In this document: positions 6,825-42,945 of the stretch, piece after piece
How positions within the stretch are numbered: position 1 is the stretch's first letter
Layout: the number at the start of each line of letters is the position of its first letter
Assembly (NCBI GenBank): GCA_002269645.1
Contig: NIVC01000462.1
Span: 153,516-217,515, forward strand
Length of the DNA stretch: 64,000 nucleotides
Direction: 5' to 3'
Origin: Macrostomum lignano
Lineage: Eukaryota
Translations under genes and position numbers: made by a program
Notes under the pieces: generated by a model
What the model saw: only the letters and a program-made list of their open reading frames with translations
Database searches by the model: none
What the model was told of the DNA's origin: nothing

Positions 6825-8441
6825 TCAGCCTCGAACAAAGTACACTCCATCGGTGCTGCTCAGGTTGGCAGGCGGGTAGGCGAACCTCAGCAGGTGGCAC
6901 AGGCGCTGCTGGCCAGAGAAAATCACAGCCTGGCAGTCGGGGTTGGCCTCGCACAGAGTCACGCAGCCAACATCGGCTGCTGCTGCTCGACTCCAGTAGG
7001 TCAGCCAGGTCGCTTCCACCGTCAGGGCCGGCATGGCAGCCCTTCTGAAGCAGGTTTTGTCTGCGAAATTCGGTTGAAGCATTGTTGAATTACATGTGCG
7101 AGATGCTGCATGACCGTTAGACAGGCTAATTGAAGTCCTGCAGTGACTACTAACTGCAGTTATACTTAATTGTAGGATGCTGGTTGCCAGATTTTCAATT
7201 TTGTAGGTCACTTCCAAATTGTAAATTTGAAGAAGGTAATGGTACTTACATACAGAAAGAAGATAAATGAAATCAGATTAGCAATAATTCATTGGATAGA
7301 AACTACGTAATTAAGATCAAAGGGTGATTACTTTTGTTGGTTAAACGTTAATCCCTTTCAAAACTTGCAAAAGGAAACAAAATCACCAAGCTAACAAGGA
7401 ACGAGAAGTATGTATAATAATCTACTAAAACGAGGAGAATGTCTATGCTCGCTTCGCTCGCATTTTTTCCTTTGGTACTTTCTGTTGCCTCGGAGATTCT
7501 GCATAGACATTCTCCTCGTTTCAGTTGGTTATTGAAGTGTAATTCCACGAATGCAAGGAACGGAGAATATATTGACTAGATTCGCGGAGATAATGAGTAT
7601 TCTCCGCCCCCTGTATTCGCAGGACACGTTTTGTCTATGGTAGAAGAAAGTGTTCAATCAACCTCACTCTGGCTCACGGCCTTAACTTTATTGTCTATGG
7701 CAGCGGAGGTTACTTAGTGAGAATCTCCGCTAGCAAAGCACTAACGACATAGACAAGGCGTACAGGCAAAGTGGGATACATACGTACCATGAATACACTA
7801 GACTCGATACCATACCACTGAGCAGCTCACATCTGATACTTGCACCAAAGTGTTCAATTCTGTGTGATTCTCTCCCACCTATCCCCAAGGCACAGAGTAC
7901 GTGTATACATAGAGCTGAAGATTAATTAGAAAGAGCATGAGGCCTGCTGTGCACTCTGTACATGTCTTCTGCATGCGAGTGCTCAGGAGTGAATAGAATA
8001 GCCATTCGAGCTAGCCTCATCGCCAGCTGCAAGTCGGCACTCACTCGGGTAGGTCAGCGCAAACACGGAGTTCTTGTACGCGTCTCCGCATGTCTGAGAG
8101 CCGTTTCCCCGGCAAGCGGTGCTGCACTCGCTCTCCGCAGCAGTTCCGTGCGATCCGTAGGACTTGCCACAGAAGCACTGACGGCCCACCTGGACACCGA
8201 AGTACGGAAAACCGCCCAGAGAGCAGACGCTGCTGCACAGCTCGTGACTCTGCTGGCTGGTCTTCACTCCGGTCGTGACGCTGAACTCACCGATTCTACT
8301 CACGCCATCCAGTCCGTTCAAGTCCCTGACCGAGTTGTCCTTGTAGCAGCCGACATAGGAGAACTGGACCTCTCTGGTAGACACGCTGGCTGCCAGAACA
8401 GCCAGGATGCAGGATGCTTGGATGGACACTAGCCCAAGCAT
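6825..8441 (-). CDS. Secreted WSC + PAN/Apple-like protein, copy 1 (subfamily B), 210 aa
   Basis: Exon 1 8441-8045: hydrophobic signal, YVGCYKD..ELCSSVC..FGVQ..CFCG..C...C.GN..CG, donor GTGAGT. Exon 2 7060-6825: acceptor ttcgcAG, GCVTLC..DC..LCHLL. Phase-1 intron joins in frame. Confidence 0.85.
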
Positions 8442-10967
8442 TGCAAGCTTGGAATTGACGGAAACTCTTTAGGCAGCTCCCTTTTAAACAAATAATTTTT
8501 GTCTGCTCGCGGTAGTTTTATGCAAGACACTGCTGCTGAATTGTGCAAACCAAAAGTAAATGCCATCTATACTACTGAGAAAAAAGTAGATTCCTCCGTT
8601 ATCGGTTTGCTTTACTCTGTAAATTAGTCACAATTATTCATCTGTTTGTTTCTCTACTTTGAGATGTGGATGAGGCCAAGTTTGACCCAGAAAAGATATG
8701 CTGTGAGAAGCCCCAAACTACTGGAGCAGCCCCCTAGGAGATTTGTTCAAGCAGGTTCTGAAGGTCTTTGTATTGAGTCAGTCACATTAAGAGCTGGCTT
8801 GAATGCCTGCTTGTAACAACCTATCTGAAAGTACATGTGGGGGAGTTTAATAAATAAGAGTTACCCTCAGCTGAAACGACAGCCTGCCAAGGAGTTCTGT
8901 AAAACTGGCCATCTTTGAATGAAAAATGTCCCATAAATACCCTCTTCAAAGCCAAAAATTATCGATTGAAATAATAGTTAGACTGTGCAATGTAATTCAT
9001 TCAAAAAGCGGCAAAGTTTTTTTTCTATCATATGCTGAATTTTTTAAAGATAAACTAAACATGCAATAGTGCAGTGTTAAACAAATTAATGCACACTGAA
9101 GATAGGTCAAAGCAAACACTGAGGGAGTTTTGACTCAAGTCACCCCGTAGTCATAGTAACAGAGGCCTTCACTTTGGTTGTCTTTCGCGCTAAAATATTA
9201 GATAATGAAATATCTACATGGACCGAGCGCGTGCCGACATATACATGTAGTAGAAGTCAACCAAAAGCTAGAAAGGTGCAGGCCGTTACTATAAAGTGAT
9301 GCCTCTTTGGTAAAACAAGCATTTTTAGTGTTGCTCCTGGTGCTCAGTGATCGGTGGTTGGAATCGATGTGTCTTCTAGGAGTATAGTTTATAACGAAAA
9401 ATGGGTTGGCGCTTTGTATCTTATTGTTGAATACGCGACCAGTGAGACACCGGATGACTTACTTTGAGTAGTAAGAACTACAGTTAGTTTAACTTTCTCT
9501 CTTCTAATCTACACTACTTTACCTGACTCATTTGGGGAGGATTTCGCCTTGTGAAAAACATTTTAAAGCTTATCCTTGAAGCATTGGTTTTTGTTGTGCT
9601 CTATGCGGACTGGCCACTGTACACTGTGTCCCCTCTCCTCCTGCAGCCAATCAGCTCCGGTCCATCTCACTGGCATTGCAACGCACACACCATCCACCTC
9701 TCCAACTAAGAATAGCCTTCATAAATCTAAGCCCTTACGCAAGACATTGTACTCACTCATCTATTACCATTGAAATGAAAATGGAAGACAGTCCTCTGGA
9801 CCAGTCTCTTGCATTCAACGTGGAACAAATTGAATAAGCTGGTGCCGTGGAATCATCTTCTCATGAGGTGGAACACTGTTGGCGCTTTTACCCTTGGCTT
9901 TGCAGTGACTGCAATTGGACCTCGCCTGTAACAAATCTTCACGTTGTTTGTCAGTGCACTTGGCACTTTTCATCTCGCCTCGCCTACTCTCTTTGCTCTC
10001 GACGTGCTTCTTTAACAGCGAATTTTTATAGAAAGCTGCGAGCAGCTGTGTCTCAGAGCTTTGTTTTTTCAAACTGTTTCCACCTTCCAGCTGGTGAATT
10101 TGCCTTGAATTTGAGAAGGCTTGAATTTCTTCTCAGTTTTTTGCATGCGCTCACAAGAGGCTTCAGGGAATTGTTCCAGTCTTTCCGCTCAGCAGCGAAT
10201 CTGCTACAGATGAGAGCAGCTCGCAGGTTGCTTCCAGTTTCCGCTCCATAAATTCACTCTCACCAGTCAGATGTCTGGCCTCCCAGTTTCCTGAACTTCA
10301 ATAGTTGCAAATTCAGACACCGGGACATTCATTCTATTGACTAAATGAACTTTTACTAGCGTTATTTTACGATAACGCTAAGGTTGACTGATTCTAATGC
10401 TGTCCCAAATTTCAAGTCACAGCTCTGGGTCTCTTACGGTATCTGATATTTTTCCAGCTGTCGGTCTGTCTACTCGGCAATGCGGATAACGTTAACGTTG
10501 ACTCAGGAGGTTTAGGTTATTGAGAACCGCAGAATTTGACAAGAGCTCGCTTCTATCCATCGGAACCTAAAAAACTCTTTTTTTCTTTCTCTATCTTTCA
10601 CCAGACTGCTTTTGAACTAACTCCTGAGATGCTATCACCATCGGGCTGTCATCAGTTGACACATCAAGCCCGTGGCTTGGCGCTTTGTCCTGTATTGGCG
10701 TCCGGTGAACACCGTTGAAATTGACTCTGTCCTGGTCCACGTGTCTCAGAACGGGTCAATCTACATGTAATTTACATGTAACTGAATTTGTCGACTCAAT
10801 CAATTAAGAGACCCTCAAAATTTCAGATTTGCAGTTGATATTTGAAATTGCTTAACACAATAAAGCATAGCCAAAATATGATTCTGGTGTATTTTTAAAG
10901 GCCTGCTTCGATAATGATTCAGAATTCTTCTCAGTTTTTTTATTACATCGAACAGACCCACTCAGCC

Positions 10968-11915
10968 TCACAGCTTCATCCAGACCCACTCAGCTTCGCT
11001 GGCCACCTCAGCGGGCACAGCGGCGAATCTCAGCAGGCGGCACATGCGGCTCGAAGGCACGAAGGCGCAGCCCTGACAGTCCGGGCTTCGCTTGCAGGCG
11101 GCAGCGCACTGGATGGCGCTCTTGGCAGAGACGCTGCTGTGGGTGATGAAGCTCAGTGAAGCTGAGATGCTCGGCATGGCAGAAACTGCCAGCTTTGTCA
11201 CTGTTTGGTCAGCTGCAAAGTTGAATTAAAACAGAATTCAGTAAAAAAACTACGTCACAACTAGGAGCGCATTTATATGGGCAAATCTCTGTGACTTATT
11301 CAATAGGCATTTTCCAAGAGTGTGCATTTGCAGCAGAGTTTTAAAAAGAACATCTTAGAAATAGTTAATTTGTTACAGGCATCCAGCTTCGTGTGAGAGT
11401 TGTTGACGTTTTAACGACGTTAGAACATACTGTGCATACTATGCTACTGTGGCAAGAAAAACAACAAGCGCTTCAGAAAAATCGCTCTTACCCTGATTAT
11501 AAATATTTTCGTAGACGGAGTTCCTCTGAATTCCACCGCAGATTTGGGATGAGTTTCCCTTGCAATTATACGAGCAGTCACTCTCCGGGGCGGGACCGAA
11601 CGAGCCGTAGCTGTTGCCGCAGCAGCAGTATGCACGGTACCTCGTACCGAAGTACCGAAATCTCCCATAAGCGCAGATCTGGCTGCACAGCTGCAGCGTC
11701 ATCGAAGTGTTTCGAACAAGAAAAGGATTTTCTGAATGGGTCGAATGCGGACCGAGTGCAGTGACTCCAACGAGACCTGCCATATCGGGGTCCGCAGAGT
11801 CCACGAAGCAACCGATGTAGCGGAATGCCGTCGGATGAGGTGGCACCGAAGTCAAGCAGCTTCCGAACGCCGCCCACATCATCAAGTAGCCTACAGAAGA
11901 GCTTTTTGAAGACAT
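10968..11915 (-). CDS. WSC + PAN/Apple-like protein, copy 2, 222 aa
   Basis: Exon 1 11915-11492: MSSKSS.., YIGCFVD, LCSQIC, FGTRY..CCCG, CGG, donor GTAAGA. Exon 2 11212-10968 after ctttgcAG. Phase 1, in frame. The signal peptide is weaker than in the paralogues. Confidence 0.8.
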
Positions 11916-15424: not shown

Positions 15425-15655
15425 AACAGTCTCACAGCTTCATCCAGTCCTACTCAGTCTCACAGCTTCATCCAGACCCACTCAGCCTCACAGCTTCATC
15501 CAGACCCACTCAGCCTCACAGCTTCATCCAGACCCACTCAGCCTCACAGCTTCATCCAGACCCACTCAGCCTCACAGCTTCATCCAGACCCACTCAGCCT
15601 CACAGCTTCATCCAGACCCACTCAGCCTCACAGCTTCATCCAGACCCACTCGGCC
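15425..15655 (-). repeat. 28-bp minisatellite (8 copies) spanning the stop codon of WSC-PAN copy 3
   Basis: cagcttcatc recurs every 28 bp from 15435 to 15631. Confidence 0.95.
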
Positions 15656-16509
15656 TCGCTGGCCACCTCAGCGGGCACAGCGGCGAATCTCAGCAGGCGG
15701 CACATGCGGCTCGAAGGCACGAAGGCGCAGCCCTGACAGTCCGGGCTGCCGTAGCAGATGGTGGCGCATTCAACTGCACTGCTGGCTGCAATGCTGCGGT
15801 GAGTGATGGAGCTCGCGGAGGCTGTGATGTTCAGCAGAGACGTCACGGGCAGTTTCGGCATCACCGGATTGACTGCAGAAGGGTTGGTTGAAAATATGGC
15901 ATGCCAATATTATTGTTAATATTTTTATCGGTCAAATCAATTCGAATATTGCTTGTAAAATCTCCCAATGAGAACTGATTTTAATGAAAAAAGAGTTCAG
16001 TGTTTTTAGGTCGTCCTTCGCTAAATTTACGCAACCTGTGTTTACACTTGTACAAGCTGCGTTAATCCGGAACGCTTACTTGGTGAGTAAGTCAATTCGT
16101 AGATAGAATTTCTGTAAGCTCCACCGCAAATTTGAGACGAGTTCCCGCTGCAAGCTCTGCTGCAGTCGCCAGCCGGTGCGATGCCGTGCGATCCGTAGGC
16201 CGAGCCGCAGCAGCAGAAGCTGTGGAGCTGAACTCCAAAGTAGCGAAATCGGCCGTAAGAGCACATGTGGCTGCACAGTTGCAGTGTCATCTTGGCGCCA
16301 TCGTAGACAAATGCTGGGAAACCAGGGTGAGTCTCAAACTGTCCGAACTTTTTGACTCCCTCCAGTCCTACAAGATCTCGGTTGCCATCAGCGCCATCCA
16401 CGTAGCAGCCGAGGTGGCGAAACTCCAACGGTTGAGGCGGCACGGAAACAGCGGCGAAGCGTCCGGAACCGGCTGCCCAGCAGAGCAGCAGAGCGCAGAG
16501 TTTCAGCAT
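15628..16509 (-). CDS. Secreted WSC + PAN/Apple-like protein, copy 3 (subfamily A), 224 aa
   Basis: Exon 1 16509-16080: MLKLCALLLCWAAG signal plus WSC motifs, donor GTAAGC. Exon 2 15872-15628 after cttctgcAG. Phase 1. Confidence 0.88.
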
Positions 16510-16747: not shown

Positions 16748-17543
<796 letters not shown>

Positions 17544-17834
17544 CGTGCGATCCGATCCGTAGGCCGAGCCGCAGCAGCAGTAGGCCGCAGACTGAACTCC
17601 AAAGTAGCGAAATCGGCCGTAAGAGCACATCTGGCTGCACAGTTGCAGTGTCATCTTGGCGAAGTCGAAACCGAATGCTGGGATACCAGCGTGAGTCTCA
17701 AACTGTCCGAACTTTTTGACTCCCTCCAGTCCTGCAAGATCTCGGTTGCCAACAGCGCCATCCACGTAGCAGCCGAGGTGGCGAAACTCCAACGGTTGAG
17801 GCGGCACTGCAGCAGCAACGCAGCATCCGGAACC
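17544..17834 (-). pseudogene. WSC exon-1 pseudogene (subfamily A)
   Basis: PPQPLEFRHLGCYVDG...CCCGSAYGS then runs into (GATA)n. The start codon and signal peptide are deleted at 17834 relative to copies at 16.5/30.9 kb (gaacc microhomology). Confidence 0.85.
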
Positions 17835-19226: not shown

Positions 19227-19959
19227 TCAGCCGCGAACAAAGTACACCCCATCGATGCTGCTCAGGTTGGCAGGCGGATAGGCGAACCTCAGCAGGTGGC
19301 ACAGGCGCTGCTGGCCAGAGAAAATCACAGCCTGGCAGTCGGCTGAGGCTTCACACAGCATCACGCAGGTGACATCGATTCCGGCAGGGCGGGTCCAGTG
19401 GATCCGTTGCGAGGCAGTCACTGTCAGGGTTGGCCTATCAGTCTGTTGAAAGCATTTGCTAGCTGAAAGTGCGAAATCAAATCAGAGAATTCAGGGAATA
19501 TGCCCGCTTTGATTCATTGGTCGCTAACAGTTTGCACTTTTAGTATTAACACTCACTCGGGTAGGTCAAAGCGAAAACAGAGTTTTTGTAACTGCCTCCA
19601 CACTTTTGACTGGAGTTTCCAGAGCACGCAGTGTTGCAGAGGCTGTCAGCGACTGATCCGACTGAGCCATAGGATGAGCCGCAGTAGCAGTACCGTTGGT
19701 GCTGCACCCCGAAAAACAGGAATCCGCCCAACGAGCAAATGCTACCGCACATTTCGTGGGTCATCCCGCTGTTACGGATGGCCGAATATACAGTGTTTCC
19801 GTACCCACCAACGTTTGTGACATCCGCAAATCCGTTCAAGTCTCTGTTGCTTCCTTCGTCTTGAAAACAGCCAACGTAAGAGAACTGGATCACCCTGCCA
19901 GCGGCGAGGACCCAGAAGGTGCACACAGCGACCAGAACGATTGACTGTCTGTAGAACAT
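19227..19959 (-). CDS. Secreted WSC + PAN/Apple-like protein, copy 4 (subfamily B), 212 aa
   Basis: Exon 1 19959-19557: MFYRQSIVLVAVCTFWVLAAG signal, WSC, donor GTGAGT. Exon 2 19462-19227 after ctttcAG. 94-bp phase-1 intron. Confidence 0.88.
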
Positions 19960-22759
19960 GTTTAAAGTTGTATATCCGGGCCGCTTTCTTCTGCTCCCTC
20001 GAGGAGTTTGCAAAGCTTCATATAGTTTTGCATTGGGCTACTCTGATTGGTTATTTGCAGATCTACATGTATCACTGCACTTTGAGCTAAGATCTGTGTA
20101 GATAACTGATATGCTACTTTAAGTACAAACTGTGCGTTTGAACTCTAAGTAACCAAAAAGCTCGATACACGAGCTTTCAAACAGGCAGCATAAAGAACGG
20201 AATCACCTGTCAACGACGCTGGGCAAAATAGCCAGGCAGAGATCAAAGAGATCGTATGTTAAAAAAGCATTTTTTATTTTGCTCTAAGCCCTGAATCCCG
20301 TTCATGTCTCGCTGCAGCCTAGCACTAGCCCAAAGCCTCCGCTCCTCGTCTCCCAGGTTCTTCCATGTACAGTTGAGAGGAGAGAAGCTTCAATAGACGA
20401 AATGGGAACAGAGCCATGTGTGAACTCTGGGAGCAGTGTGGAGCGAGGCGGAGAGTCACAGAGAAGGCAGAACCTCCACACCCATTCTATGCTAGAAGGT
20501 TAATATTATCGATTGAATTTTGCCTCGCTGAGCAGTCGATGCAGCTCCTTGCTCAGGCGCCTGTCTATCAGTGAGTCGCCTGACATTACTACTGTTTAGG
20601 ATAGCAGTGTGTCGATGCCAAAGATACACCTAAATCAGGATTTTACAGTTTATTGGTGCCCGCTGGCATAAAAAGCGCAGAGCAAGCCACTAAAGTATAA
20701 AAACTTTTATACACATGCAAGCTTGTAAGGCATTGTACTTTTCACGTACTTGATCGATGTGGAGTCAAATGCTCCGAGCAGCCGAATTTCGTAGCTTCTT
20801 TTTTAGACTACAAAAGCAGCGTTCTTGACAGAAGTGACAGCAACCCCCACAAAGCAGCTTAAAGATTACCATGCAGTCTCACGCAAAATTTTGGACACGC
20901 ACGAATTTATCACCATTGAATTGAAAATGGAAGACAGTCCTCTGGACCAGTCTCTTGCATTTAGAGTGGAACAACTTGAACAAGCTGACCATTATCTTCT
21001 CATGAGGTGGAAAAAATTCTATTGGATGAGCTTAGAGGAGACTGATTCAAGATGATGACGGATAAAGCGATCGATTGAGGGATGTTGACGAGCGCACCAG
21101 CGATCAAGAGAAAAAAAAGTCGACTGGGGCATGAGCGTCTTCTTTACTGCCTGACACGAAGTCAAGAAAACAGCTTTGGACTCTTGAAGATGCGTCTAGT
21201 CTGATGGTAATCAAGGACTATGACAAAATGGCGAGGTTATGAAAGCAAACTATTTCATGGCCTATTCTCTGACAATTAAATTTTATATTTCTTGGCACTT
21301 TCTTGGTCAGAGCCACTAGGTGTATAAGCGATGTATGAGCGACAACAAAAGGCTACCGATATTTTGCAGACAGAAAGGGGTGGAAAAGGAAAAAATGGAA
21401 ATCCAGATCGTTAGAACTTGCAAGTAATACAGTCAACATCGTTTCCTGCTGTGCAGGTTTTGAAGGTCCTCTGTATTGAGCCAATCGAAATAAGACACTG
21501 GCAACACTGGATAAGCTGGTTTGAGCAGTAAAAACCAACGCAAGACTAACCTGTCTTTTCTGAACCACACTACTTTATCTGACTCATTCGAGGTGAATAT
21601 TGCATTGTGAAATACATTTCGAAACTTTTCTAAATCTAAGACTGTTGGATCTTGTGTGTGGGGTATTCCGTGTAGTATTTATTGCTCACGATTTTCACTC
21701 CGTGCGTGTGCTCATCGTGTATTGCTCGCGCTCCTTGCACCTCTCTGCTCTATCGTAACTTTAACGTACCCTGTTGGCGCTTTTGCCCTTGGGTTTGCAG
21801 TGGCTGCAATTGGACTTTGCCTATAATAAATCGTCGACACGTTGTTTGTCAGTGCACTTGGCACTTTTAATCTCGCCTCGCATACTCTTTGCTCTTGACT
21901 TGCTTCTTTGACAGCGAGTTTTTAGAGAAAGCTGGGAGCATGTGTCTCACAGCTTGGTTTTTTTCCACCCTGTTTCTACCTTCCTGCATCCTGGTGGAAA
22001 CGCCCGGAGACGGCTTGAATTTCTTCTCCGTTTTTTGCATGCACTCCCAAGAGACTTCAGTGAATTGCTACAGTTTTTCTGCTCAGCAACGTATCTGCTA
22101 CAAATGAGAGTAGCTCGTAGGTTGCCTTCGGTTTCCGCTCCATAAATTCACTGTCACCAGTCAGATGTCTAGCCTCCCAGTTTCCTGAACTTCAATGGTA
22201 GCAAATTCAGATATCAGTGAATTCATTCAGATATCAGTGAATTCATTCTATTGACTGAATGATTTTTTACCAGCGTTGTTTTAAGATAACGTTAACGTTG
22301 ACTGATTCTACTGCTGTCAGAAATTTCAGTCACAGCTCTGGGTCTCTTACGGTATCTGTTATCTATAATATTCCCAGCTGTCTGTCTGTCTACTCTGCGA
22401 TGTGGATAACGTTAAGGTTGACTCAGGAGAGGTAATTTATTGAGAACCACAAAATTTGTACTTGAGCCTCTCATGCTGACAAAAGTCCGCTTCCCTCCAT
22501 CGGCACCTAAACAAATCTATTTTCTTTCTCTCTCTTTCACCAGACTGCTTTTAAACAAACTCCTGAGATACAATCACCATCGGGCTGTCATCAGTTGACA
22601 CATCGGGCCCGTGGCTCTCTTCAACTACGCTCGTTGCTGCACGATCACTGGATCTGGCCTGACGTTTCGTCCTGCATTGGCGTCCGATGAACACCGATGA
22701 AATCAACTCTGTCCTGGTCCAAGTGTCTCAGAACGGCTCTCAATTTGTCGACTCTTGGG

Positions 22760-22847
22760 GCAGAGACGCTGCTGTGGGTGATGGAGCTCATTGAAGCTGA
22801 GATGCTCGGCATGGCAGAAGCTGGCAGCTTGGTCATTGCTTGGCCAG
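22760..22847 (-). pseudogene. Truncated PAN exon-2 fragment (paralogue of copy 2)
   Basis: Acceptor plus MTKLPASAMPSISASMSSITHSSVSA, then a deletion joining to the sequence found at about 10797 in copy A. No matching exon 1 upstream. Confidence 0.75.
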
Positions 22848-23567
22848 CTACAAAAGTTGAATTAAAACTGAATTTAGGAAAAAATTACCCAAAAACTAGA
22901 AATAATATATTTAGGAGCGTATTTATATAGGCAAATCTCTGTGAATTATGCAATCTGTATTTTCACAGTGTGCATTTGCAGCAGATTTTAAAAAAAACTT
23001 AGTTAAGAATTAGTTAAGTTGTCACTGGTATTTCCATCGATGCAAGTTTGGATAGTTTTTCAAAAACATTGAAACCCGGAATACAGTCGCAACAAAGAAT
23101 TGCCATGTGTAAAGATCGCCAATGAATATCAGTAAATAAAATAATTATTAGCACTCATTTTTAAAGACATCAAAAACATAGTAGGAAAGCGTCTACTTAA
23201 AGTGTTTTCTATCTGAAATTTTTATTCTATCTGAGGTGTACAGCTAACCATAATTAATTTACAGGTATTTAAATCTACACAACCATTCGTCCGCTAGTGT
23301 TGCAATATATGCTGGCTATTAGGGTTGAAAATCATGCGTGAGAGTCGCAGAGAAGGCAGAACCTTCAAACCCAGTCTGAACTTCTTGCTTGTTCTGGAAG
23401 CTCAACTTTTCGTATGGATTCCGCCTCGCTGAGCAGTCGATGCAGCTGCTCGCTCAGACGCTTGTGAGTTGCCGGATTTGAGCCTCGAATTATTAAAGTG
23501 TACCACCTGGCAGAATATTCCTGTATTGCTTATGATGACATTGTGTTGATGCCAAGTATACGCCCAA

Positions 23568-26875: not shown

Positions 26876-26898
26876 CGTTCAAAATTGAGGATTTTTAC

Positions 26899-27200
26899 CT
26901 GTCAAATGGTGATCTCAAAGACGTAATTGATCCAGTTAGCGCCATTGCAGATGTCACTGCACGGGCTGCACATTCTCCCTCGTCGACCGCCTGAACACCA
27001 AAAAAGCAGAACCGATCTTACGAGCATGAAACCGCTACACCTCTGCAGTGTTATTTTCGTGCTCTTGACGAAGGCGGTCAACTGTGTACCGGCCAAACGC
27101 CATGACACATTCGAGTCCTTGCAGGTCTCGACCGCTGTTCTCCCTGCTGTCAGCGAGGCGTCCAGTGTAGCGACTTGTCGGAACTGAGGCGTGTATCGGA
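26899..27200 (-). pseudogene. Degenerate WSC exon-1 pseudogene
   Basis: RYTGRLADSRENSGRDLQGLE / AFVKSTKITLQRCS / FFGVQ, with frameshifts and an internal deletion right after GVQ. Ends INYVFEIT plus a donor-like GTAAAA. Confidence 0.7.
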
Positions 27201-30070: not shown

Positions 30071-30910
30071 TCACAGCTTCATCCAGACCCACTCAGTCTC
30101 GCTGGCCACCTCAGCGGGCACAGCGGCGAACCTCAGCAGGCGGCACATGCGGCTCGAAGGCACGAAGGCGCAGCCCTGACAGTCCGGGCTTCGCTGGCAT
30201 GCGGCAGCGCACTGGACGGCGCTCTTGACAGAAATGCTGCGGTGAGTGACTGAGCTCGCGGAGGCTGTGATGTTCGGCAGAGACGTCACGGGAAGTTTCG
30301 GCATCATTGGATCGACTGCAGAAAGGTTGGTTATAAAAAATTGATTTGAAATAGAATATTTATAATTTTAATCGCTCAAATAACTAATTTAAAGTACGAA
30401 TGAAGAACGCGGCGTTTTAAGGTCGTACTGGGCTAAATTAACCTGTGTTTTAACGATCTGCGTTAATCCGGAACGCTTACTTGGTGAGTAAGTCAGTTCG
30501 TAGATAGAGTTTATCGAGTCTCCACCGCAAATCTGAGACGAGTTTCCGCTGCAAGCAAAGCTGCAGCCGTCAGCCGGTGCGATGCCGTGCGATCCGTAGG
30601 CCGAGCCGCAGCAGCAGAAGTCTTTAGACTGAACCCCAAAGTAGCGAAATCGGCCGTAAGAGCACATCTGGCTGCACAGTTCCAAGGTCATCTTGGCGTC
30701 ATCGTATACAAATCCTGGGATACCAGGGTGAGTCTCAAACTGTCCGAACTTTTTGACACCCTCCAGTCCTGCAAGATCTCGGTTGCCACTACCGCCATCC
30801 ACGTAGCAGCCGCGGTGGCGAAACTCCAACGGTTGAGGCGGCACGGAAGCAGCGGTGCAGCGTCCGGAACCGGCTGCCCAGCAGAGCAGCAAAGCGCAGA
30901 GTTTCAGCAT
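30071..30910 (-). CDS. Secreted WSC + PAN/Apple-like protein, copy 5 (subfamily A), 224 aa
   Basis: Exon 1 30910-30481, exon 2 30315-30071. Canonical GT/AG, phase 1, intact frame. Confidence 0.88.
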
Positions 30911-32489: not shown

Positions 32490-32813
32490 GCAAGACCCGT
32501 ACGCAGATCCGCAGCAGCAACACAGGGCTGTTTAGACACCAAAGTAGCCGAACCGACCGTATGAGAAGATCGGGCTGCACTTCTGCAGTGTCATTTTCCT
32601 ACTCTTGACGAAGGCGCTGTACTTGCGGTCAACTGTGTACCGGTCAAACGCCGTTATGCCTTCCAGTCCTTGAAAGTCTCGATCGCAGTTCTCTCTGCCG
32701 TCAGTAAAGCATCCGATGTAGCGAACCTATCGGAACTGAGGCGGCTCAAAAGCCAGCAGCACCCATACAGACAAGAAGGCAACTAAAATTATAAGCGCTT
32801 GCATTGCTTTCAT
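32490..32813 (-). pseudogene. WSC exon-1 pseudogene with signal peptide
   Basis: MKAMQALIILVAFLSVWVLLA..FR*VRYIGCFTDG..MTLQKCS..FGV*..CCCCGSAYGS. Two in-frame stops, and truncated after GSAYGS. Confidence 0.8.
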
Positions 32814-33556: not shown

Positions 33557-34391
33557 TCACTGCTTCATCCAGACCCACTCAGCCTCGCTGGCCACATCAG
33601 CGGGCACAGCGGCGAATCTCAGCAGGCGGCACATGCGGCTCGAAGGCACGAAGGCGCAGCCCTGACAGTCCGGGCTGCCGTAGCAGATGATGGCGCATTC
33701 AACAGCACTTCTGGCTGCGATGCTGCGGTGAGTGATGGAGCTCGCGGAGGCTGTGATGTTCGGCAGAGACGTCACGGGCAGTTTCGGCATCACCGGATCG
33801 ACTGCAGAAGGGTTGGTAGAAAATATTATTGTCTTAAATATCACTTATAAATATAGTAAAATAAATTCAAATGACGACTTTGGAACACAGAGCGTTTTTA
33901 GTCGTCTTTTGCTAAATTAGGCTGTGTTTACGCTTTACGTGCTGCGTTAATCCGGAACGCTTACTTGGTGAGTAAGTCAGTTCATAGATAGAATTTCTTG
34001 AAGCTCCACCGCAAATCTGAGACGAGTTTCCGCCGCAAGCTGAGCTGCAGTTGCCAGCCGGTGCGATGCCGTGCGATCCGTAGGCCGAGCCGCAGCAGCA
34101 GAAGCTGTGGAGCTGAACTCCAAAGTAGCGAAATCGGCCGTAAGAGCACATCTGGCTGCACAGTTGCAGTGTCAGCTTGGCGCCATAAACAAACGCTGAG
34201 TGAACAGAGTGAGTCTCAAACTGTCCGAACTTTGAGACTCCCTCCAGTCCTACAAGATCTCGGTTGCCATCAGCGCCATCCACGTAGCAGCCGAGGTGGC
34301 GAAACCCCAACGGTTGAGGCGACACCGAAGCAGCGCCGAAGCGTCCGGAACCGGCCGCCCAGCAGAGCAGCAAAGCGCAGAGTTTCAGCAT
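33557..34391 (-). CDS. Secreted WSC + PAN/Apple-like protein, copy 6 (subfamily A), 223 aa
   Basis: Exon 1 34391-33965, exon 2 33801-33557. Canonical sites, phase 1. Confidence 0.88.
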
Positions 34392-34712: not shown

Positions 34713-37700
34713 TGACTTACTTACTTGACTTAGCTGAAAAGGGGCTCCGTGCATCTTAATGCAGCGAGGCGTCGTTGCCGCTGGCGACCACAGGCAGCTG
34801 CATGGTGCTGCGGTGTCGCGCAGGGAGATGCGGTGGGGCCGGTGTCCGCAGCGCGGTCCTCCTTCGGAGAGTCCCGGAGGTGGATGGTAGCTCGCCCGGT
34901 AGCATTAGGACGAGCTGGCAGAGATTCTCGGGCCTGGAACCGTCGGAGATGTCCGGGTTTGGGCCGAGGTAGGTGAGCCTGTCCTGTGCAAAGGCGGGGC
35001 ATTCACAGATGAATTGCTCCGCATTCTCGACACTGAAGAGGCCGAATGGGCATTCCTCGCTACGGATTTTTCCATGGAGGTAACGATGCCTGGCAAAACA
35101 CCCATGACCTGATAGAGCCATGGTCACCGCCGTGATGTCCCTGCACGCGGTTGAGTCCAAGCAGGACCCTGCGCAGGGCGGAGGAAGGACTTTGGACAGC
35201 CGCGCGGGATTGCCGGCATTCGGGGGCGTTAGCCCACCTCTCCCTGTGCTTAGAAGCCACCACTGGTTGATCCGAGTCGTGACAACGGCGATGGGGGTGG
35301 GGGCCACGGGCAGGGGACCAGTAAAAGAACCGGTCGAGTCAGCCTTGGCCAGGCGATCGGTGAACTCGTTGCCGGGGTGGCCTCAGTTCCCGGGATCCAC
35401 CTTAGGAACACCTTGTTGGAGGCGCTTAAGCGGTTAAGCTGCCCGATGCAGTCAAGGACTGTACGCGAGCAGGTGGTGGTGCGCTCAAGGGCGTGGATCG
35501 CCGCTTGACTGCCGAGTGGAAGGTAATCTCCTTCCCCCAGACGCGCTGATTATACAGCTCCATGGCGCAGAAGCTGATGGCGAGAATTTCGTTCTGGAAA
35601 TCGGTGGAGCAGGCGCCGGTGTGCTGGGAGATGGTCGACACGGTTCTCCTTCCAAACACGATTCAGTAGTCGTAGTCAGAGGCGGAGTTGATTTGGGACC
35701 CGTCAGTGAAGCTCCTTCCAGACACGATGCAGTAGTCGTAGTCAGAGGCGGAGTTGATTTGGGACCCGTCAGTGAAGCTCCTTCCAGACACGATGCAGTA
35801 GTCGTAGTCAGAGGCGGAGTTGATTTGGGACCCGTCAGTGAGCAATAGATTTCTCGGGGTTTCCAGTTGTTCCTAGTGGAATGCTGGTTTTGAATTTGCG
35901 TGGATCGGATTCCGTCCGAGAGGGTCAACAGGCTTCTCGCTGCTTCCAGGTCTCGCAGTCTGAGGTCGACGTGCGGCCGAAAGTTCCGCTTTTTGAAGAC
36001 AAACTGCTTCTGGATTTGGACACCCGCGTCAAGCAGACTGCTGGTGGTTTTCATTGCCTCCCCTCTGACAAATAGGTCAAGTGGGGAATGTCCAGGAAGG
36101 AGTTCATGAAAGCAAAGGGTATAGAGGCGCTCATGATAGCTAGACAAGTGCGGCCATGCACCCTGTTAAGAGCATCGAGAACCCCTTTCACCTCTACGGC
36201 GCTGTTCCATATGAAGCCGGCGAAGGAGATGGCATCGTAAATTCACCAGAGGCCTCGGGTAGCGCCGAAAGCTCTGCGTATCTTTCGGAAGCTCTCGAAA
36301 GCTTTGCGGGCTTTAAATTGGACACCTCTTCAACCAAACCAAACCTGGTCGAGGGGGACGCCCAGACATCTGGTTTGTTTCTCCATGGCAACGGGGTTGC
36401 CATAGAGGGAGAGCGGTTCTATCCTCCAGTTTCGGCGGCTGGTGAACATGCTAGCCACAGTTTTAGACTCAAGGAACCTGAGGCCGCAGCTGTGTGCCAG
36501 CGCTCGGCACTATGGATGACGGCTTGGAGGAGGTCTCTGAGGACCGTGGGTAATGGTCCAGCGACAGTGGCAGTAACATCGTCCGCATAGCCGACCTTCT
36601 GAACTGGGTCCGGATGCGGGCTACAAAGCAGCTCGTTCATGACCAAGTTACAGAGAATCGGGTTGAGGACTCCATCTTGCGGTCTGCCTTTCTGGACCTC
36701 CACAGACCGGGAGTGTCCCGAAGGTGCGAGGTGGTATTACGATGGGAGACCATGTACATGATCCAGCGGGTAAGGTGCTCGTGCGTGCCCCGGGATTCCA
36801 GGGTCCGCCTAAAGGCTTCAAAGAGCACATTATTGAAAGCACCATCGATGTCGAGGAAAAGCGACAGCGTGTATCCACTGCCAAGCACGGCGCGTTTCAA
36901 CTTGTCGACAATGGCGTGCAGCACACCTTCGATGGAGTGTCCAGGACGAAAGCCGTATTGATTAGGGGAGAGCGGAGAGTTCCTCATCTCAACGAGGAGG
37001 AGACGCCAGAGCACCAGCTGTTTCATCAGTTTGAGGAAGAAAGACTGATGGGGCGGTAAGCTTTGGCAGAATGATAGTCTCCCTTCCCTGGTTTGAGTAT
37101 GAATACTATGGTTGCCTCTTGCCAGGCTTTTGGCACGTCCCCGAGGGTAATGCTGGCCTTGAAGAGGTTGCAGAGGAGACCAAGAAACATGTCATTTTTA
37201 ACTGCCTCATGAAGGAAGGCAGGATAAATGTTGTCAGGTCCCGGTGACTTGAAAGGAGAGAATAGGATTTTGCGACGCGAGCCGTCGTCTCTCTAGTAAT
37301 GATGGTCGAAGCCAGGATCTGTCCACCCGGAGAGTGGTCCGGGGGGACCTAGCTGCTGCGCGGCACGTGGGAAAGAGCCTAGCCTGTGAGCATGATTTCC
37401 AGGGATTCCTCGGGGTTCTCCGCGAGCCGGCCATTGGGTCTTTTAATGAATAAGAGCTTTGACTTTTTGTCGAGGTTGAGAGCCTTGATCACGCGCGAAG
37501 TAGGGCGGGTGCCTTCAAACTCGGCGCAGTATTGGCACCACTAGTCGATCGGACTTGGATTTCCTGGTTTCACGCTTAAAGTCACAAATCGCGTCTTGAT
37601 AAGCGCCCAGCTCAGCTGGGTCCTTGCTCTTGCCAGCTTTCCGTTGGAGGCACTTTGCCTTGCGCCGTAGTTGATGGGCAGATCAGCGAACACTCTGACT

Positions 37701-39060: not shown

Positions 39061-40308
39061 CAATTGTAGAAATCAAGCTACAAGAACTTTTAACTGAGAC
39101 AATCCTGTGGAATCCAACAGGCTTTTCAACACAGAATTTTGCATAAAATTCCCAAATATCGTCAGAAGTGTGCATGAGGCGTTGAGGCGGATTGGGTGAG
39201 CCTTGACGCTGAAATTATCGGAGAACATGGAATTAATGAAGAGGCTGGTGGTGAACAGGCTGCAGCTGGCAGGACACTTCTTCATCATTGAAATAATCAG
39301 TTCGCACAATGACGCCAAAGACGGTCCTGTGAAAAATCTGACTCAATAGAGAACTCGCAGCAAATCAGCGCAAAACGTTTTGGACGAAATATCGGACAGG
39401 ACCGTTGGCCACACATCTTCTGGCAAGCGTGCTGAGTAGCTTAACCGCGTGTTTGCCTAAACTATTTTTTTGCAAGCACCGTCTGCAATGCAACCAAGGA
39501 CTACTCAAGTATCATATATATAGGACGCAACACTCGAAATCTATGGTAAATGTTTTGAAAGCAACTTTTTGCCGAAAAATACACTACAGAGATAGGAGGT
39601 TTAAATTTTTTCAGCACAAAATTGTTATTGCTTTTGATAGGAGGCAGATCCAGTGTTCATGCTTTGATATCTTGTGCCTTTCTTTTTGCTCTATCGATAT
39701 TCATAAAGCTTTTCGTTCAGAAATAGTTTTAAAGGCAGGTTTCACCGAAAAAATACACTACGGAGATATGAAATTTCACGATTTTCAACACTAAAACAGT
39801 GATTGGGTCTCTTAACAATGTCAGAGAAAGCTTTCCTTGAATGCAACCACTAGTCAGCTAACAAATATTGTCAATTACAATACCAGTCAGGACCGATTTT
39901 CCAAAAATACATGTTCAACGCAATTAAATGAAACTATTCTTTTTCCTTTGAAGTTTTATCAGTGCACAGTCGCCACTAATAAGCGGTTTTAGCTGTCTAG
40001 ACAACTGACAGGCAATAAAAGAATTCGTGTCAAAAGGCACGTCTTAAAACTTTTGATTTGCATTCGTTACTATAGATAGATTTATAAATATTAAGATATA
40101 AACCATAGCCAAAATATGGCTCTCTTGTATTTTAAAAAGTTTCTCACGATTATTACTAAGAATTTTTATCAATGTTTGATATTACACCGAACAGATTCGA
40201 AGCTTCATCCAGACCTACTCAGCCTCACAGCTTCATCCAGACCTACTCAGCTTCAAAGCTTCATGCAGACCCACTCAGCCTCACAGCTTCATCCAGAACC
40301 ACTCAGTC

Positions 40309-41165
40309 TCACTGCTTCATCCAGACCTCCTCAGCCTCGCTGGCCACCTCAGCGGGCACAGCGGCGAATCTCAGCAGGCGGCACATGCGGCTCGAAGGCA
40401 CGAAGGCGCAGCCCTGACAGTCCGGGCTGCTGTAGCAGATGGTGGCGCATTCAACGGCACTGCTGGCTACGATGCTGCGGTGAGTGACGGAGCTCTCGGA
40501 GGCTGTGATGTTCGGCAAAGACGTCACGGGCAGTTTCGGCATCACCGGATCGACTGCAGAAGGGTTGGTAGAAAATAATTTTGACTTAAGTATTTTGATT
40601 GGTCAGATTTATTATACTATTGCTGGCAAAATGGCCCAGTTCGAACTACATTCAAGAATGACCTCAGAACCCTGGGTCTTTCAGTCGTCTGGCTCAGTGA
40701 GACTCTCTTTACGCTTCTAGCTCGTACGTGCTGCGTTAATCCAGAATGCTTACTTGGCGAGTAAGTCAGTTTGTAGATAGAGTTTCTCGAGACTCCACCG
40801 CAAATCTGAGACGAGTTTCCGCTGCAAGCCAAGCTGCAGTTGCCAGCCGGTGCGATGCCGTGCGATCCGTAGGCCGAGCCGCAGCAGCAGTAGCTGTGGT
40901 GCTGAACTCCAAAGTAGCGAAATCGGCCGTAAGAGCACATCTGGCTGCACAGTTGTAGTGTCATCTTGGCGATGTAGTAAACGAATGCTATGGAATGAGG
41001 GTGAGTCTTAAACTCTCCGAACGTTTTGACCCCCTGCAGTCCTACAAGATCTCGGTGGCCATCAGCGCCATCCACGTAGCAGCCGAGGTGGCGAAACTCC
41101 AACGGTTGAGGCGGCAGCGCAACAGCGGCTGCCCAGCAGAGCAGCAAAGCGCAGAGTTTCAGCAT
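40309..41165 (-). CDS. Secreted WSC + PAN/Apple-like protein, copy 7 (subfamily A), 218 aa
   Basis: Exon 1 41165-40754, exon 2 40553-40309. Canonical sites, phase 1. The signal region is 6 codons shorter than in copy 3. Confidence 0.88.
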
Positions 41166-42290
41166 TGGGAAAAAATCCCAGAGAGCGGCCGAACCGCAGT
41201 TTCTGAGACGCTTCTTCTGATTCAGGTAACAAATTTAAGCAATATATTTGCTGGAAGAAGCCAATGGAAGAATCGCCCAAAAAATGTCGTGAATCCATTG
41301 GCTAAGATGTCATCTTCATGGGCATTAGAGATCGTCTACTTTTGATTAGAAGGAAGAGAAATATCCGGCTAATCTCCGGCAAGAGTTTTTTTAGGATTAA
41401 TGCCTTCATTTCTCTTAGGGCTCCTTTGTTTGTGCACTGTCCTCTCCACCCCTCCTTGGGGCGGATGTTTTTCTAACCCGCTTATTTATCTGTGCCACCC
41501 TCTGTGCCACGTAGTTCGCTCTGACTTTGCAGTTCAAATTTTAAAAAACTCCTTTTATTCTTTTAATCTTGTTTTTTTGCCAAATAAACTTATCGTTTCC
41601 ACGGGTCGCTTTCCCGACCTCTCGCGCTGCTTCGGTCATAGACATTTGCCTGCCTGCTGTTCGTCTCCTTTGCTAATGGGGTGTGATAATAGAGGAAAGA
41701 ATAGAATATTCTTTCTTCCATGGGTGTGATTGGTTAATTCAAACCGACTGTAAACAACAAAAGAGACTGTTAAGAGAGCCGGGCTAAATAATGCTTGGGT
41801 AAGCAAATAAGTTATGATTCTGTGGTTTTCTTCATGGCTGCTGGGCTTAAACGCTTGCACATCAGTTGATCAATTTCATCCTCTTATCTTGTTTAAATAC
41901 GAAGTAAGATGATTGGCTTTCGTTTGACATGTACAACAGCAATGTTTGTAGAGATTTCTTCAAGCTTTGCTCGTCAGTCAAGCTTTAGTTGATGAAGAAT
42001 TTGTAATTATTTGATAGCCATCAGCTTTATAACGAGGAACTACCAGCTAGAATGCAAAGATTGCAAAGATGTTTAGCTGTCAGTTAGGATATGTTACAGA
42101 TGCAATTCGATGTTTAATTTTGTTTGTTCAGCATAATCTACAAAAAATAGTTCCACTTCGAATTATTTCTTCCATAAACTTTAAAAAATTAGATTGCTAC
42201 TAGCCATATTATAACTGTAAAGACTTCACTTTCGATTGTAGAACGATATACGCTTGATACGGGGCAAGCGACAACGATTAATGTTGTAAA

Positions 42291-42721
42291 TGTTGAGCAC
42301 GATACATTTAGTGGATAAGGCTTAGGGATGGAGGATAATTAGTGGCCAGAATGAAGAACGTACATGAGCACACAGTGAAACAGGTAAAAAGACCACCCTC
42401 AAACACTGAATAAAGTGATAAACACTGAAATCAACCCAGCCAAGTCAACACACTCCTCCCCACAAAGATTATAGCGTTGGATTAAAACGGAAATAAAAGA
42501 TGCAAATCAGTTCACAGTCCATAGAAGAACAGTTCATTGTCACTGGTAGCGCAGCCTGTCAGGTTCGGCTCTCGCCCTGGTCGAACGTCGAAGTGGCGCC
42601 TCAGAACTCAACTCTGGCGCCTGGCCAGGCGTCTCTGCAGAGGCCTCCGGTTGATTGTCAGGCACCTTGGCACATAGCGGTTGCTCGGCTTCGGAAGGCG
42701 CTGGAGGCTCCGGCTGCCAGG
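42291..42721 (-). mobile_element. LTR retrotransposon 3' fragment (pol C-terminus, PPT, short 3' LTR)
   Basis: PLRRSTRARAEPDRLRY* (integrase-tail motif). Polypurine tract GGGGAGGAG at 42461-42453. Then a 160-bp segment bounded by TGTTGA...TCAACA (42450-42291). Confidence 0.65.
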
Positions 42722-42945
42722 TTGTACGCCGAAGAACGAATGTCCACCCAATGAGCAAATGCTGGCGCACAACTCGTGGGTCATACTTTGCTGGTCTTTG
42801 ATGCTGAAAAACCCAGTTAGTCTCATATCTAACAAGCTTGCTAACTTTTTTTGATCTCATCAAAGCCTCGTTCGGTATTTCCATCGACGCTGCATGCCAA
42901 CAAAGTGCAGGCCGTGACCAGTGCAATTATTGACTGTAGAGCCTT
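42722..42945 (-). pseudogene. WSC exon-1 pseudogene (subfamily B-like)
   Basis: LQSIIALVTACTLLA signal remnant, a frameshift, then MTHELCASICSLGGHSFFGVQ followed by an abrupt switch to LTR-element sequence. Confidence 0.75.

What the first reader, a model, noticed from the sequence alone, without database searches (positions are those of the whole stretch)
6825..42945. Tandem array of secreted WSC + PAN/Apple proteins: candidate diversified glycan-recognition family undergoing birth and death
Seen in sequence: seven intact two-exon genes and five broken copies lie on the same strand within 36 kb. All share the architecture signal peptide, one WSC domain, phase-1 intron, one PAN-like domain, stop, with no TM segment. 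There are two subfamilies, ending ..WVWMK[L/Q] and ..YFVRG. Established: WSC domains are cysteine-rich modules implicated in carbohydrate binding, and PAN/Apple domains mediate protein and glycan interactions. Inference: a minimal secreted WSC-PAN fusion, expanded in tandem with frequent pseudogenisation, fits an invertebrate innate-immune, mucus or adhesion lectin repertoire. I do not recognise this two-domain family as a named one.
Basis: partly seen in the sequence, partly recalled or inferred. Interest (0 to 1): 0.85.

Follow-up and report, generated by a model that had tools for sequence, protein, structure and literature searches.

The report
Flatworm tandem array of WSC-PAN genes
This 36-kb stretch of a Macrostomum flatworm genome carries seven working and five decayed copies of a small secreted two-domain (WSC plus short PAN/apple) protein gene; I found this family only in this genus, and it is a lineage-specific gene expansion of unknown tissue role, not a new kind of system.

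Summary
Seven intact two-exon genes (A, B, C, E, H, J, K) and five broken copies (D, F, G, I, L) lie on the minus strand between 6825 and 42808. Each intact gene encodes a hydrophobic N-terminus, one WSC domain with 8 invariant Cys, a phase-1 GT..AG intron, one short 4-Cys PAN/apple domain, and a stop. None has a TM segment.

Pfam, an AlphaFold model (pLDDT 81) and Foldseek support both domains. Every named full-length relative is a Macrostomum lignano protein (54-89% identity). There are at least 35 clusters, all automatic "WSC domain-containing" entries. The compact architecture was found in no other taxon.

The array evolves by duplication, decay and gene conversion. The last ~125 nt of the coding sequence are 97-100% identical between copies whose synonymous divergence elsewhere exceeds 1. 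Gene H is a mosaic. A 28-bp minisatellite reiterates the stop-codon region. Variation sits in four WSC patches, but pN/pS there is about 0.9, so positive selection is not shown.

Function is inferred: secreted glycan or ligand binders. Literature on this genus points instead to prostate (seminal-fluid) secretions, where WSC proteins dominate. No direct expression link was found. Interest is moderate.

The parts
6825..8441 (-). Gene A (YFVRG type), intact. Exon 1 8441-8045, intron 984 nt, exon 2 7060-6825. 210 aa.
   Evidence: The acceptor is ambiguous (7153, 7105 or 7060); 7060 was chosen by homology to E and to M. lignano models.
10968..11915 (-). Gene B (divergent WVWMKL type), intact. Exon 1 11915-11492, exon 2 11212-10968. 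222 aa.
   Evidence: AATAAA lies 24 nt after the stop. The N-terminal hydrophobic stretch is weak.
15628..16509 (-). Gene C (WVWMKL), intact. Exon 1 16509-16080, exon 2 15872-15628. 224 aa.
   Evidence: 89% identical to M. lignano P0003.
15427..15657 (-). 28-bp minisatellite, 8.2 copies. It begins in the last codons of gene C and reiterates ..EWVWMKL-stop.
17553..17834 (-). Pseudogene D: 5' part of a WSC exon without start codon or signal peptide. It runs into the (AGAT)n microsatellite at 16750-17542.
   Evidence: 91% nucleotide identity to C.
19227..19959 (-). Gene E (YFVRG type), intact. Exon 1 19959-19557, intron 94 nt, exon 2 19462-19227. 212 aa.
22752..23031 (-). Remnant F: part of the intron and the first ~30 codons of a B-type PAN exon.
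   Evidence: It lies in a duplicate block (21768-26663 matches 9873-14856 at 77-80%).
26986..27191 (-). Remnant G: frameshifted WSC exon of the I subtype.
   Evidence: 76% identity to I over 209 nt, E 9e-41.
30071..30910 (-). Gene H (WVWMKL), intact. Exon 1 30910-30481, exon 2 30315-30071. 224 aa. Exon 2 is a mosaic of C/J/K-like and B-like segments.
32493..32813 (-). Pseudogene I: WSC exon with two in-frame stops. A possible 3' remnant of its 28-bp repeat lies at 31403-31440.
33557..34391 (-). Gene J (WVWMKQ), intact. Exon 1 34391-33965, exon 2 33801-33557. 223 aa.
34756..37059 (-). Non-LTR retrotransposon fragments inserted between J and K. They account for the high-GC stretch.
   Evidence: Pfam RVT_1 on 36637-37026 and 36419-36703; GC 0.53-0.56.
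40309..41165 (-). Gene K (EVWMKQ), intact. Exon 1 41165-40754, exon 2 40553-40309. 218 aa. A 28-bp minisatellite lies at 40201-40338.
42722..42808 (-). Remnant L: frameshifted fragment of an A/E-type WSC exon.

Best explanation
What it is (shown). The region is a tandem array from a Macrostomum flatworm (M. lignano or a very close relative). It encodes a genus-restricted family of ~210-225-aa secreted, disulfide-rich proteins. Each protein has one WSC domain with 8 invariant Cys and one minimal 4-Cys PAN/apple domain (C-x3-C-x5-C-x11-C). The array evolves by segmental duplication, decay (5 of 12 copies) and ectopic gene conversion.

How it most likely works (inferred). After signal-peptide cleavage, the protein acts outside the cell as a small bivalent binder.
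- The WSC module carries nearly all between-copy variation in four discrete patches on an invariant framework. It supplies variable glycan or ligand recognition.
- The C-terminal PAN half is kept almost identical in all copies. It supplies a constant interaction, such as a shared partner, oligomerisation or matrix docking.

Physiological setting (inferred, weakest step). The most likely setting is a gland secretion of the reproductive tract (prostate/seminal-fluid type), not an immune lectin. In this genus, secreted WSC proteins in multi-copy arrays are the dominant class of prostate-limited transcripts.

Likelihoods. Structure and evolution about 0.9. Extracellular binder about 0.7. Reproductive-gland setting about 0.35-0.4.
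For: Gene models, intron phase and copy number.

Domains:
- Pfam WSC and PAN_1 in 14 of 14 members.
- 8 + 4 invariant Cys.
- AlphaFold2 with a 38-row alignment gives pLDDT 81.2 and pTM 0.72.
- Foldseek best matches are yeast Wsc1 (7pz2, TMt 0.74) and KREMEN1, followed only by PAN/apple proteins: kallikrein, FXI, plasminogen, HGF NK1, lectin SML-2.
- PDB sequence search finds the KREMEN1 WSC domain at E 7e-10.

Secretion: hydrophobic N-termini and no later hydrophobic segment.

Restriction to Macrostomum:
- The first 36 hits of the profile search with names are M. lignano.
- All 10 of the full-length ~200-aa representatives that I looked up, from the search of 1.84 billion representatives, are M. 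lignano.
- The long multi-hit proteins are fused M. lignano models or fungal WSC repeats.

Gene conversion:
- dS between B and C/H/J/K is 1.3-1.6 in the WSC exon but 0.08-0.12 in the last 40 codons. For A-E it is 2.7 against 0.14.
- There is a sharp boundary in the identity profile. Within the array the block is 97-100% identical, against 83-100% (mostly about 90%) to the equally divergent M. lignano paralogue P0007 at another locus. H exon 2 is mosaic.

Functional copies: framework pN/pS is 0.64. C/H/J/K have a conserved promoter with two CCAAT boxes, and most copies have polyA signals.

Reproductive context:
- PMC5977470 Table S1: about 25-30 of 76 prostate-limited transcripts have WSC-type best hits.
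- PMC6953679: Mlig-pro46 and 'several other' seminal-fluid candidates resemble WSCD2, and SFP transcripts map to arrays such as Mlig024181.g1-g10.
- PMC4490696: prostate transcript RNA815_80.4 has two WSC domains.
Against: - There is no direct expression or binding evidence for this family.
- Primers of the 18 RNAi-tested seminal-fluid transcripts do not match the window.
- None of the Mlig_3_7 gene IDs of family members (Mlig013640, 005479, 027391, 016881, 011376, 012529, 003596, 003631, 003588, 023418, 021789, 025595, 025784) appears in that list.
- The conserved 3' strings are absent from the transcript sequences supplied with PMC4490696. The IDs are absent from the supplements of three other M. 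lignano papers.
- The WSC start motif of tested SFPs, read from their primers (GCYLHS, GCYFHSK), differs from GC[YF]xD here. This is my own reading.
- pN/pS is about 0.9, not above 1, in the variable patches. The patches were chosen post hoc.
- The species is not proven. No window protein is in the collection. The flanking kinesin-14 has no close M. lignano hit.
- Foldseek does not report which half of the model aligns to PAN proteins, and the WSC fold is itself PAN-like.
Confidence: 0.4

Rival explanations
1. One reading: a diversified innate-immune, mucus or adhesion lectin repertoire. It would be secreted by epidermal, gut or gland cells to recognise microbial or environmental glycans.
For: - Secreted, Cys-rich WSC and PAN modules are used as carbohydrate binders elsewhere. 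The Foldseek list includes the galactose-binding PAN lectin SML-2 and heparin-binding HGF NK1.
- Tandem expansion with birth and death and patchy variability is typical of immune lectin families.
- Nothing found here excludes it.
Against: - No organism-specific evidence supports it.
- No positive selection was demonstrated.
- In the same genus, the documented niche of small secreted WSC proteins is the prostate gland.
- The M. lignano adhesion paper returned by the searches (PMC6410801) was not among the two papers that hold both 'Macrostomum' and 'WSC'.
Confidence: 0.25
2. A structural or matrix secretion, such as a component of eggshell, cement gland, rhabdite or mucus. The constant PAN tail would cross-link into a matrix and the WSC module would bind polysaccharide.
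For: - The mature WVWMK-type proteins have 14 Cys (9 + 5), which is compatible with an inter-domain or intermolecular disulfide.
- The C-terminal half is invariant.
- High copy number could serve dosage.
Against: - The proteins have no repetitive or low-complexity structural segments.
- The variable patches are unnecessary for a bulk material.
- No literature link was found.
Confidence: 0.1
3. The near-identity of the 3' 125 nt reflects selection on a nucleic-acid element rather than gene conversion. Candidates are an mRNA localisation or translation signal, a small-RNA target, or a recombination signal tied to the 28-bp minisatellite.
For: - Synonymous sites are frozen in both subfamilies, although the YFVRG type lacks the minisatellite.
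- The block is still about 90% identical in a paralogue on a different M. lignano contig.
- The 28-bp repeat is conserved at both loci.
Against: - Within-array identity (97-100%) exceeds identity to the equally divergent unlinked paralogue (83-100%, mostly about 90%).
- H shows an independent mosaic tract.
- Synonymous divergence is also heterogeneous inside the WSC exon. All three are signatures of conversion.
- No RNA-structure test was possible because there is almost no variation to covary.
Confidence: 0.15
4. The array is transcriptionally dead or an annotation artefact.
For: - 5 of 12 copies are broken.
- No window protein is present in public protein sets.
- No RNA data are available here.
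Against: - Seven copies keep full ORFs, splice sites, all 12 core Cys and promoters despite dS of 0.1 to above 1.
- Framework pN/pS is below 1.
- M. lignano paralogues are annotated gene models with the same splice junction.
Confidence: 0.03

Closest known systems
Prostate-limited WSC-domain seminal-fluid candidates of Macrostomum lignano (Mlig-pro series, e.g. Mlig-pro5 = RNA815_80.4, Mlig-pro46)
   Same: - Same genus.
- Small secreted proteins built on WSC domains.
- Encoded by multi-copy, tandemly arrayed, fast-evolving genes (PMC5977470, PMC6953679, PMC4490696).
   Different: - No PAN domain has been reported for them.
- Their primers and gene IDs do not match the window or the known family members.
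- Several have two WSC domains.
- Expression of the WSC-PAN family is unknown.
Fungal WSC proteins (yeast cell-wall sensor Wsc1; secreted or enzyme-linked WSC lectin modules)
   Same: Same WSC fold with 8 Cys. The best Foldseek hit is 7pz2 (Wsc1 sensor domain, TMt 0.74), and WSC-bearing glyoxal oxidase 9n3u and copper oxidases also appear. WSC is regarded as a carbohydrate-binding module (my knowledge).
   Different: Fungal proteins are TM sensors, multi-WSC lectins or WSC-enzyme fusions. None is a 210-aa WSC + PAN protein. Sequence identity is about 20%.
KREMEN1/2 (kringle-WSC-CUB Wnt co-receptors) and WSCD1/2
   Same: These are animal WSC domains. KREMEN1 is the closest solved structure by sequence (E 7e-10). 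PMC6953679 notes the WSCD2 resemblance of Macrostomum SFP candidates.
   Different: They are membrane proteins with other domains (kringle and CUB, or sulfotransferase). They are single-copy conserved genes, not secreted minimal proteins.
PAN/apple modules (HGF N domain, plasminogen PAp, FXI/prekallikrein apple domains, apicomplexan lectins SML-2 and MIC4)
   Same: Pfam PAN_1 hit. Beta-beta-alpha-beta-beta topology. The four-Cys core spacing C-x3-C...C...C resembles the HGF N domain (my knowledge). PMC9249922 states the core has four to six Cys. PAN proteins fill the Foldseek list after the WSC hits.
   Different: Only 44-45 of the 76 profile positions are matched (positions 12/13-56). The outer disulfide of apple domains is missing. 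None of those proteins has a WSC partner.
Environmental multi-WSC + PAN_4 proteins (P0096, P0101; JGI metagenome contigs, organism unknown)
   Same: WSC domains are followed by a PAN-type domain in one polypeptide.
   Different: They are 676-809 aa with 2-3 WSC domains and a PAN_4-type module. They are not the compact single-WSC form, and their relationship to the Macrostomum family is unknown.

Membership tests
WSC domain (Pfam PF01822) | Profile match above the curated gathering score | tested here: met
   46.9-54 bits against a cut-off of 27.8. 14 of 14 members match.
WSC domain (Pfam PF01822) | Eight conserved cysteines | tested here: met
   C35, C79, C83, C99, C101, C116, C120 and C128 are invariant in 14 sequences.
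WSC domain (Pfam PF01822) | WSC fold | tested here: met
   AlphaFold2 pLDDT is about 80-94 over the domain. Foldseek hits Wsc1 7pz2 (E 1.9e-5, TMt 0.74) and KREMEN1.
WSC domain (Pfam PF01822) | Carbohydrate binding | not testable with these tools
   Needs glycan arrays or pull-downs with recombinant protein.
PAN/apple domain (Pfam PF00024, clan PAN) | Profile match above the gathering score | tested here: met
   WVWMK type: 27.6-31.9 bits against 21.4. YFVRG type scanned as exon 2 alone: 21.2 against 21.4, borderline. All 14 full-length members match at E <= 0.01. Only profile positions 12-56 of 76 are covered.
PAN/apple domain (Pfam PF00024, clan PAN) | Core of four to six cysteines tying the helix to the central strands | tested here: met
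   Four invariant Cys (C179, C183, C189, C201). The 'four to six' criterion is from PMC9249922. The outer apple disulfide is absent.
PAN/apple domain (Pfam PF00024, clan PAN) | PAN fold of the C-terminal module | tested here: inconclusive
   The model shows beta-beta-alpha-beta-beta with pLDDT about 72-89. PAN proteins dominate the non-WSC Foldseek hits (prob 0.8-0.96). The table does not say which half of the query aligns, and WSC is itself PAN-like. The PDB sequence search found no PAN chain.
Macrostomum seminal-fluid (prostate-limited) proteins, Mlig-pro1-76 | Prostate-limited in situ expression | not testable with these tools
   No expression data are reachable. The supplements searched gave no hit.
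Macrostomum seminal-fluid (prostate-limited) proteins, Mlig-pro1-76 | Identity with a listed Mlig-pro transcript (primers or gene IDs) | tested here: not met
   Primer pairs of 18 of the 76 transcripts give only chance matches with 5 mismatches. Gene IDs do not overlap. The other 58 transcripts could not be tested.
Macrostomum seminal-fluid (prostate-limited) proteins, Mlig-pro1-76 | Predicted secretion and a multi-copy genomic array | tested here: met
   The comparison is with the PMC6953679 supplement.

The most novel reading that the evidence does not exclude
The array is a recombination-driven recognition repertoire. Gene conversion, possibly seeded at the frozen 125-nt 3' block and its 28-bp minisatellite, shuffles variable WSC loop cassettes among copies. 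It also keeps a constant PAN 'handle' identical. The result is a panel of secreted binders that act in ejaculate-recipient or host-microbe conflict. That would be a lectin counterpart of cassette-type diversification in a flatworm.
Probability: 0.12. Interest if true: 0.65.

Novelty: new variant of a known kind. Interest (0 to 1): 0.4.

Why it matters
Macrostomum lignano is the main flatworm model for sexual conflict in hermaphrodites. Its seminal fluid is dominated by uncharacterised WSC proteins. This report defines a large, genus-restricted WSC-PAN subfamily with clear gene models, a confident structural model and mapped variable patches. That gives concrete candidates for in situ, RNAi and glycan-binding work.

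The sharply bounded, conversion-homogenised 3' block is also a clean natural example of domain-specific concerted evolution inside a birth-and-death array.

It is not a new kind of system. Both domains, lineage-specific secreted expansions and gene conversion in arrays are all well known.

Tried and rejected
1. Spliced window proteins could not be handed to the representative search or to AlphaFold. I used M. lignano relatives plus per-exon window translations instead.
2. The first AlphaFold run, with 8 sequences, was useless (pLDDT 40.6). It was replaced by the 38-row run.
3. An exact look-up of the seven proteins found nothing.
4. I tried several ways to tie the family to published expression data. 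All were negative.
   - Primers of 18 SFP RNAi targets against the window.
   - Conserved 3' strings in the transcript sequences of PMC4490696.
   - Family gene IDs in the supplements of PMC7336406, PMC5816591 and PMC12896417.
   - PMC10786194 holds no supplements.
   - Supplement look-ups are now exhausted.
5. I tried to fix the species with the flanking kinesin-14. The best hits are molluscs at 52-56%, with no Macrostomum hit, so this is uninformative.
6. Three M. lignano loci were fetched; L001 and L002 could be compared with the window and L003 returned no alignments (its file may not have been available to the script). None showed synteny beyond the gene copies themselves.
7. I considered that hits extending into the PAN region marked non-Macrostomum WSC-PAN proteins. 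Most are WSC-only repeats. Two environmental proteins do have WSC + PAN_4, but in a long multi-domain form.
8. Positive selection on the variable patches is not supported (pN/pS 0.89).

Full report
OBSERVATION

The window is eukaryotic. All homologous pieces in 6.8-42.9 kb lie on the minus strand. A tblastn map made with one spliced copy, six-frame inspection and a scan of in-frame GT..AG pairs give seven intact two-exon genes:
- A: 8441-6825
- B: 11915-10968
- C: 16509-15628
- E: 19959-19227
- H: 30910-30071
- J: 34391-33557
- K: 41165-40309

Each gene has a donor right after ..TY(S)P and a phase-1 intron of 94-984 nt. The products are 210-224 aa. M. lignano database proteins are spliced at the same junction.

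Five further copies are broken:
- D has lost its start and signal peptide. It is cut off by an 800-bp (AGAT)n array.
- F is a 30-codon stump of a B-type second exon. It sits inside a 77%-identical duplicate of block 9.9-14.9 kb.
- I has two in-frame stops.
- G is a frameshifted relative of I (76% over 209 nt, E 9e-41).
- L is a frameshifted A/E-type fragment.

I and G add a third, extinct subtype.

DOMAINS AND STRUCTURE

Exon 1 hits Pfam WSC (up to 54 bits, cut-off 27.8). Exon 2 hits PAN_1 (31.9 bits for the WVWMK type; 21.2 against 21.4 for the YFVRG type alone). All 14 aligned family members match both models.

Eight Cys are invariant in the WSC part. Four are invariant in the PAN part, spaced C-x3-C-x5-C-x11-C. 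This fits the four-to-six-Cys PAN core described in PMC9249922.

An AlphaFold2 run with 8 sequences failed (pLDDT 41). A 38-row alignment gave pLDDT 81 and pTM 0.72, with a beta-beta-alpha-beta-beta C-terminal module.

Foldseek against the PDB returns yeast Wsc1 and KREMEN1 first. After those it returns essentially only PAN/apple proteins. The table does not show which half aligns, and WSC is itself PAN-like. I therefore treat the fold evidence for the C-terminal module as supportive, not decisive.

WHO HAS IT

The best hits of a spliced copy are eleven M. lignano proteins and nothing else.

A profile search of 1.84 billion representatives gives thousands of WSC hits. The 13 top-ranked full-length single-stretch hits of about 160-230 aa that I retrieved look like family members. 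The ten of these that I looked up are all M. lignano.

A profile search with names gives 36 M. lignano entries before the first fungal WSC protein. The very long top hits are fused M. lignano models or fungal WSC repeats. Two environmental proteins combine WSC repeats with a PAN_4 domain. So the domain adjacency is not unique, but the compact form is, as far as these databases go, a Macrostomum invention.

No window protein is in the collection. Identities to M. lignano proteins are 54-89%. A frameshifted M. lignano model (P0011) shares H-specific residues. The flanking kinesin-14 has no close flatworm hit. The source is therefore M. lignano or a close relative, not proven.

M. lignano contig NIVC01000045 also interleaves both subfamilies.

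EVOLUTION

C, H, J and K are young duplicates (80-86% over about 1.1 kb; dS 0.11-0.19, omega 0.5-1.0 in the WSC exon). B, A and E are old (dS above 1).

Yet the last 40 codons have dS 0.08-0.12 between B and the young copies, and 0.14 between A and E. An identity profile shows a sharp step from 45-75% to 97-100% at ..AGCCCGGACTGTCAG... The near-identity runs through the stop codon. The equally divergent but unlinked M. lignano paralogue P0007 is only about 90% identical there. H's exon 2 switches from C/J/K-like to B-like. These are signatures of ectopic gene conversion. Additional nucleotide-level constraint cannot be excluded.

A 28-bp minisatellite that starts in the last codons and repeats 'EWVWMKL-stop' follows the WVWMK-type genes, both here and in M. 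lignano.

Amino-acid variation among the young clade is concentrated in four WSC patches (H residues 59-73, 94-98, 113-119, 130-134). Both pN (0.25) and pS (0.28) are raised there compared with the framework (0.043 and 0.068). That gives pN/pS 0.89. This is mosaic ancestry or relaxed constraint, not demonstrated positive selection.

C, H, J and K share a promoter with two CCAAT boxes.

FUNCTION

Nothing here measures function. From the anatomy I infer a secreted, disulfide-locked, two-module binder with a variable WSC face and a constant PAN tail.

For the setting, the only organism-specific evidence is the M. lignano literature:
- Several seminal-fluid candidates resemble WSCD2, and they map to multi-copy arrays (PMC6953679).
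- A two-WSC transcript marks prostate glands (PMC4490696).

This makes a reproductive-gland secretion the single most likely setting (about 0.35-0.4). The link is by analogy only. Primers and gene IDs of the 18 RNAi-tested candidates do not match, and every other attempt to find expression data failed.

VERDICT

- The domain assignments are supported.
- The family is genus-restricted and unnamed, but already present as automatic database entries.
- The mode of evolution (birth and death plus domain-specific conversion) is shown.
- The biological role is open.
- This is a new variant of a known kind, of moderate interest.

Noticed in passing
window 15427-15657, 40201-40338, 33536-33590, 31413-31440; L001 10750-11219: A 28-bp minisatellite (GAGTGGGTCTGGATGAAGCTGTGAGGCT) begins in the last codons of WVWMK-type genes. 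It reiterates the C-terminal codons plus the stop 2-8 times here. In M. lignano it fills about 470 nt (roughly 17 units) 3' of the P0007 gene. An orphan unit at 31413-31440 may be the 3' remnant of pseudogene I.
   Followed up: partly
window 16750-17542: An (AGAT)198 microsatellite of about 800 bp replaces the 3' half of pseudogene D and abuts the promoter of gene C.
   Followed up: partly
window 16510-16650, 30911-31060, 34392-34540, 41166-41310 (minus strand): About 150 nt upstream of the start codon is conserved among C, H, J and K. It contains two CCAAT boxes in opposite orientation (AGCCAATCC and CCATTGGCT), about 135 and 95 nt from the start codon.
   Followed up: no
window 34756-37059; also 2886-3601, 24777-25554, 6187-6555: Fragments of a non-LTR retrotransposon (Pfam RVT_1 at 36419-37026). 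Related C-terminal ORFs (..[17 protein letters not shown]..) occur at three further places. The same tail is fused to a WSC-PAN model in M. lignano (P0189). The 34-38 kb insertion explains the local GC peak (0.53-0.56).
   Followed up: partly
window 13574-14163, 25621-26100, 38685-39021, 43774-44795: Recurrent purine-rich low-complexity element (GAGAGGA-like; reads as SPLSSLLSPL on the other strand). It occurs at several points between array units and expands to about 1 kb at the array's edge.
   Followed up: no
window 46992-50692 (-): Multi-exon kinesin-14 (KIFC-like) gene flanking the array. Its best database relatives are molluscan at 52-56% identity, and no Macrostomum orthologue was found in the protein collection.
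   Followed up: partly
window 55297-57024 (+): A 575-aa open frame. Its C-terminal third is a 66-bp tandem repeat (SAAESGL[GS]EAK..., Pfam Mucin-like, E 1e-10). The N-terminal part has hydrophobic segments and no Pfam match.
   Followed up: no
window 58000-64000: GC content drops from about 0.45-0.49 to 0.28-0.31 at the right end of the window.
   Followed up: no
window 23572-23833 and 27300-27945: Two further minisatellites (48-bp unit x 5.5; 24-bp unit x 26) inside the decayed duplicate block that holds remnants F and G.
   Followed up: no
L002 (M. lignano NIVC01000045.1:9151-29849): The M. lignano locus also interleaves WVWMK-type and YFVRG-type copies, here on opposite strands. One second exon there is 92.7% identical to that of window gene B.
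   Followed up: partly
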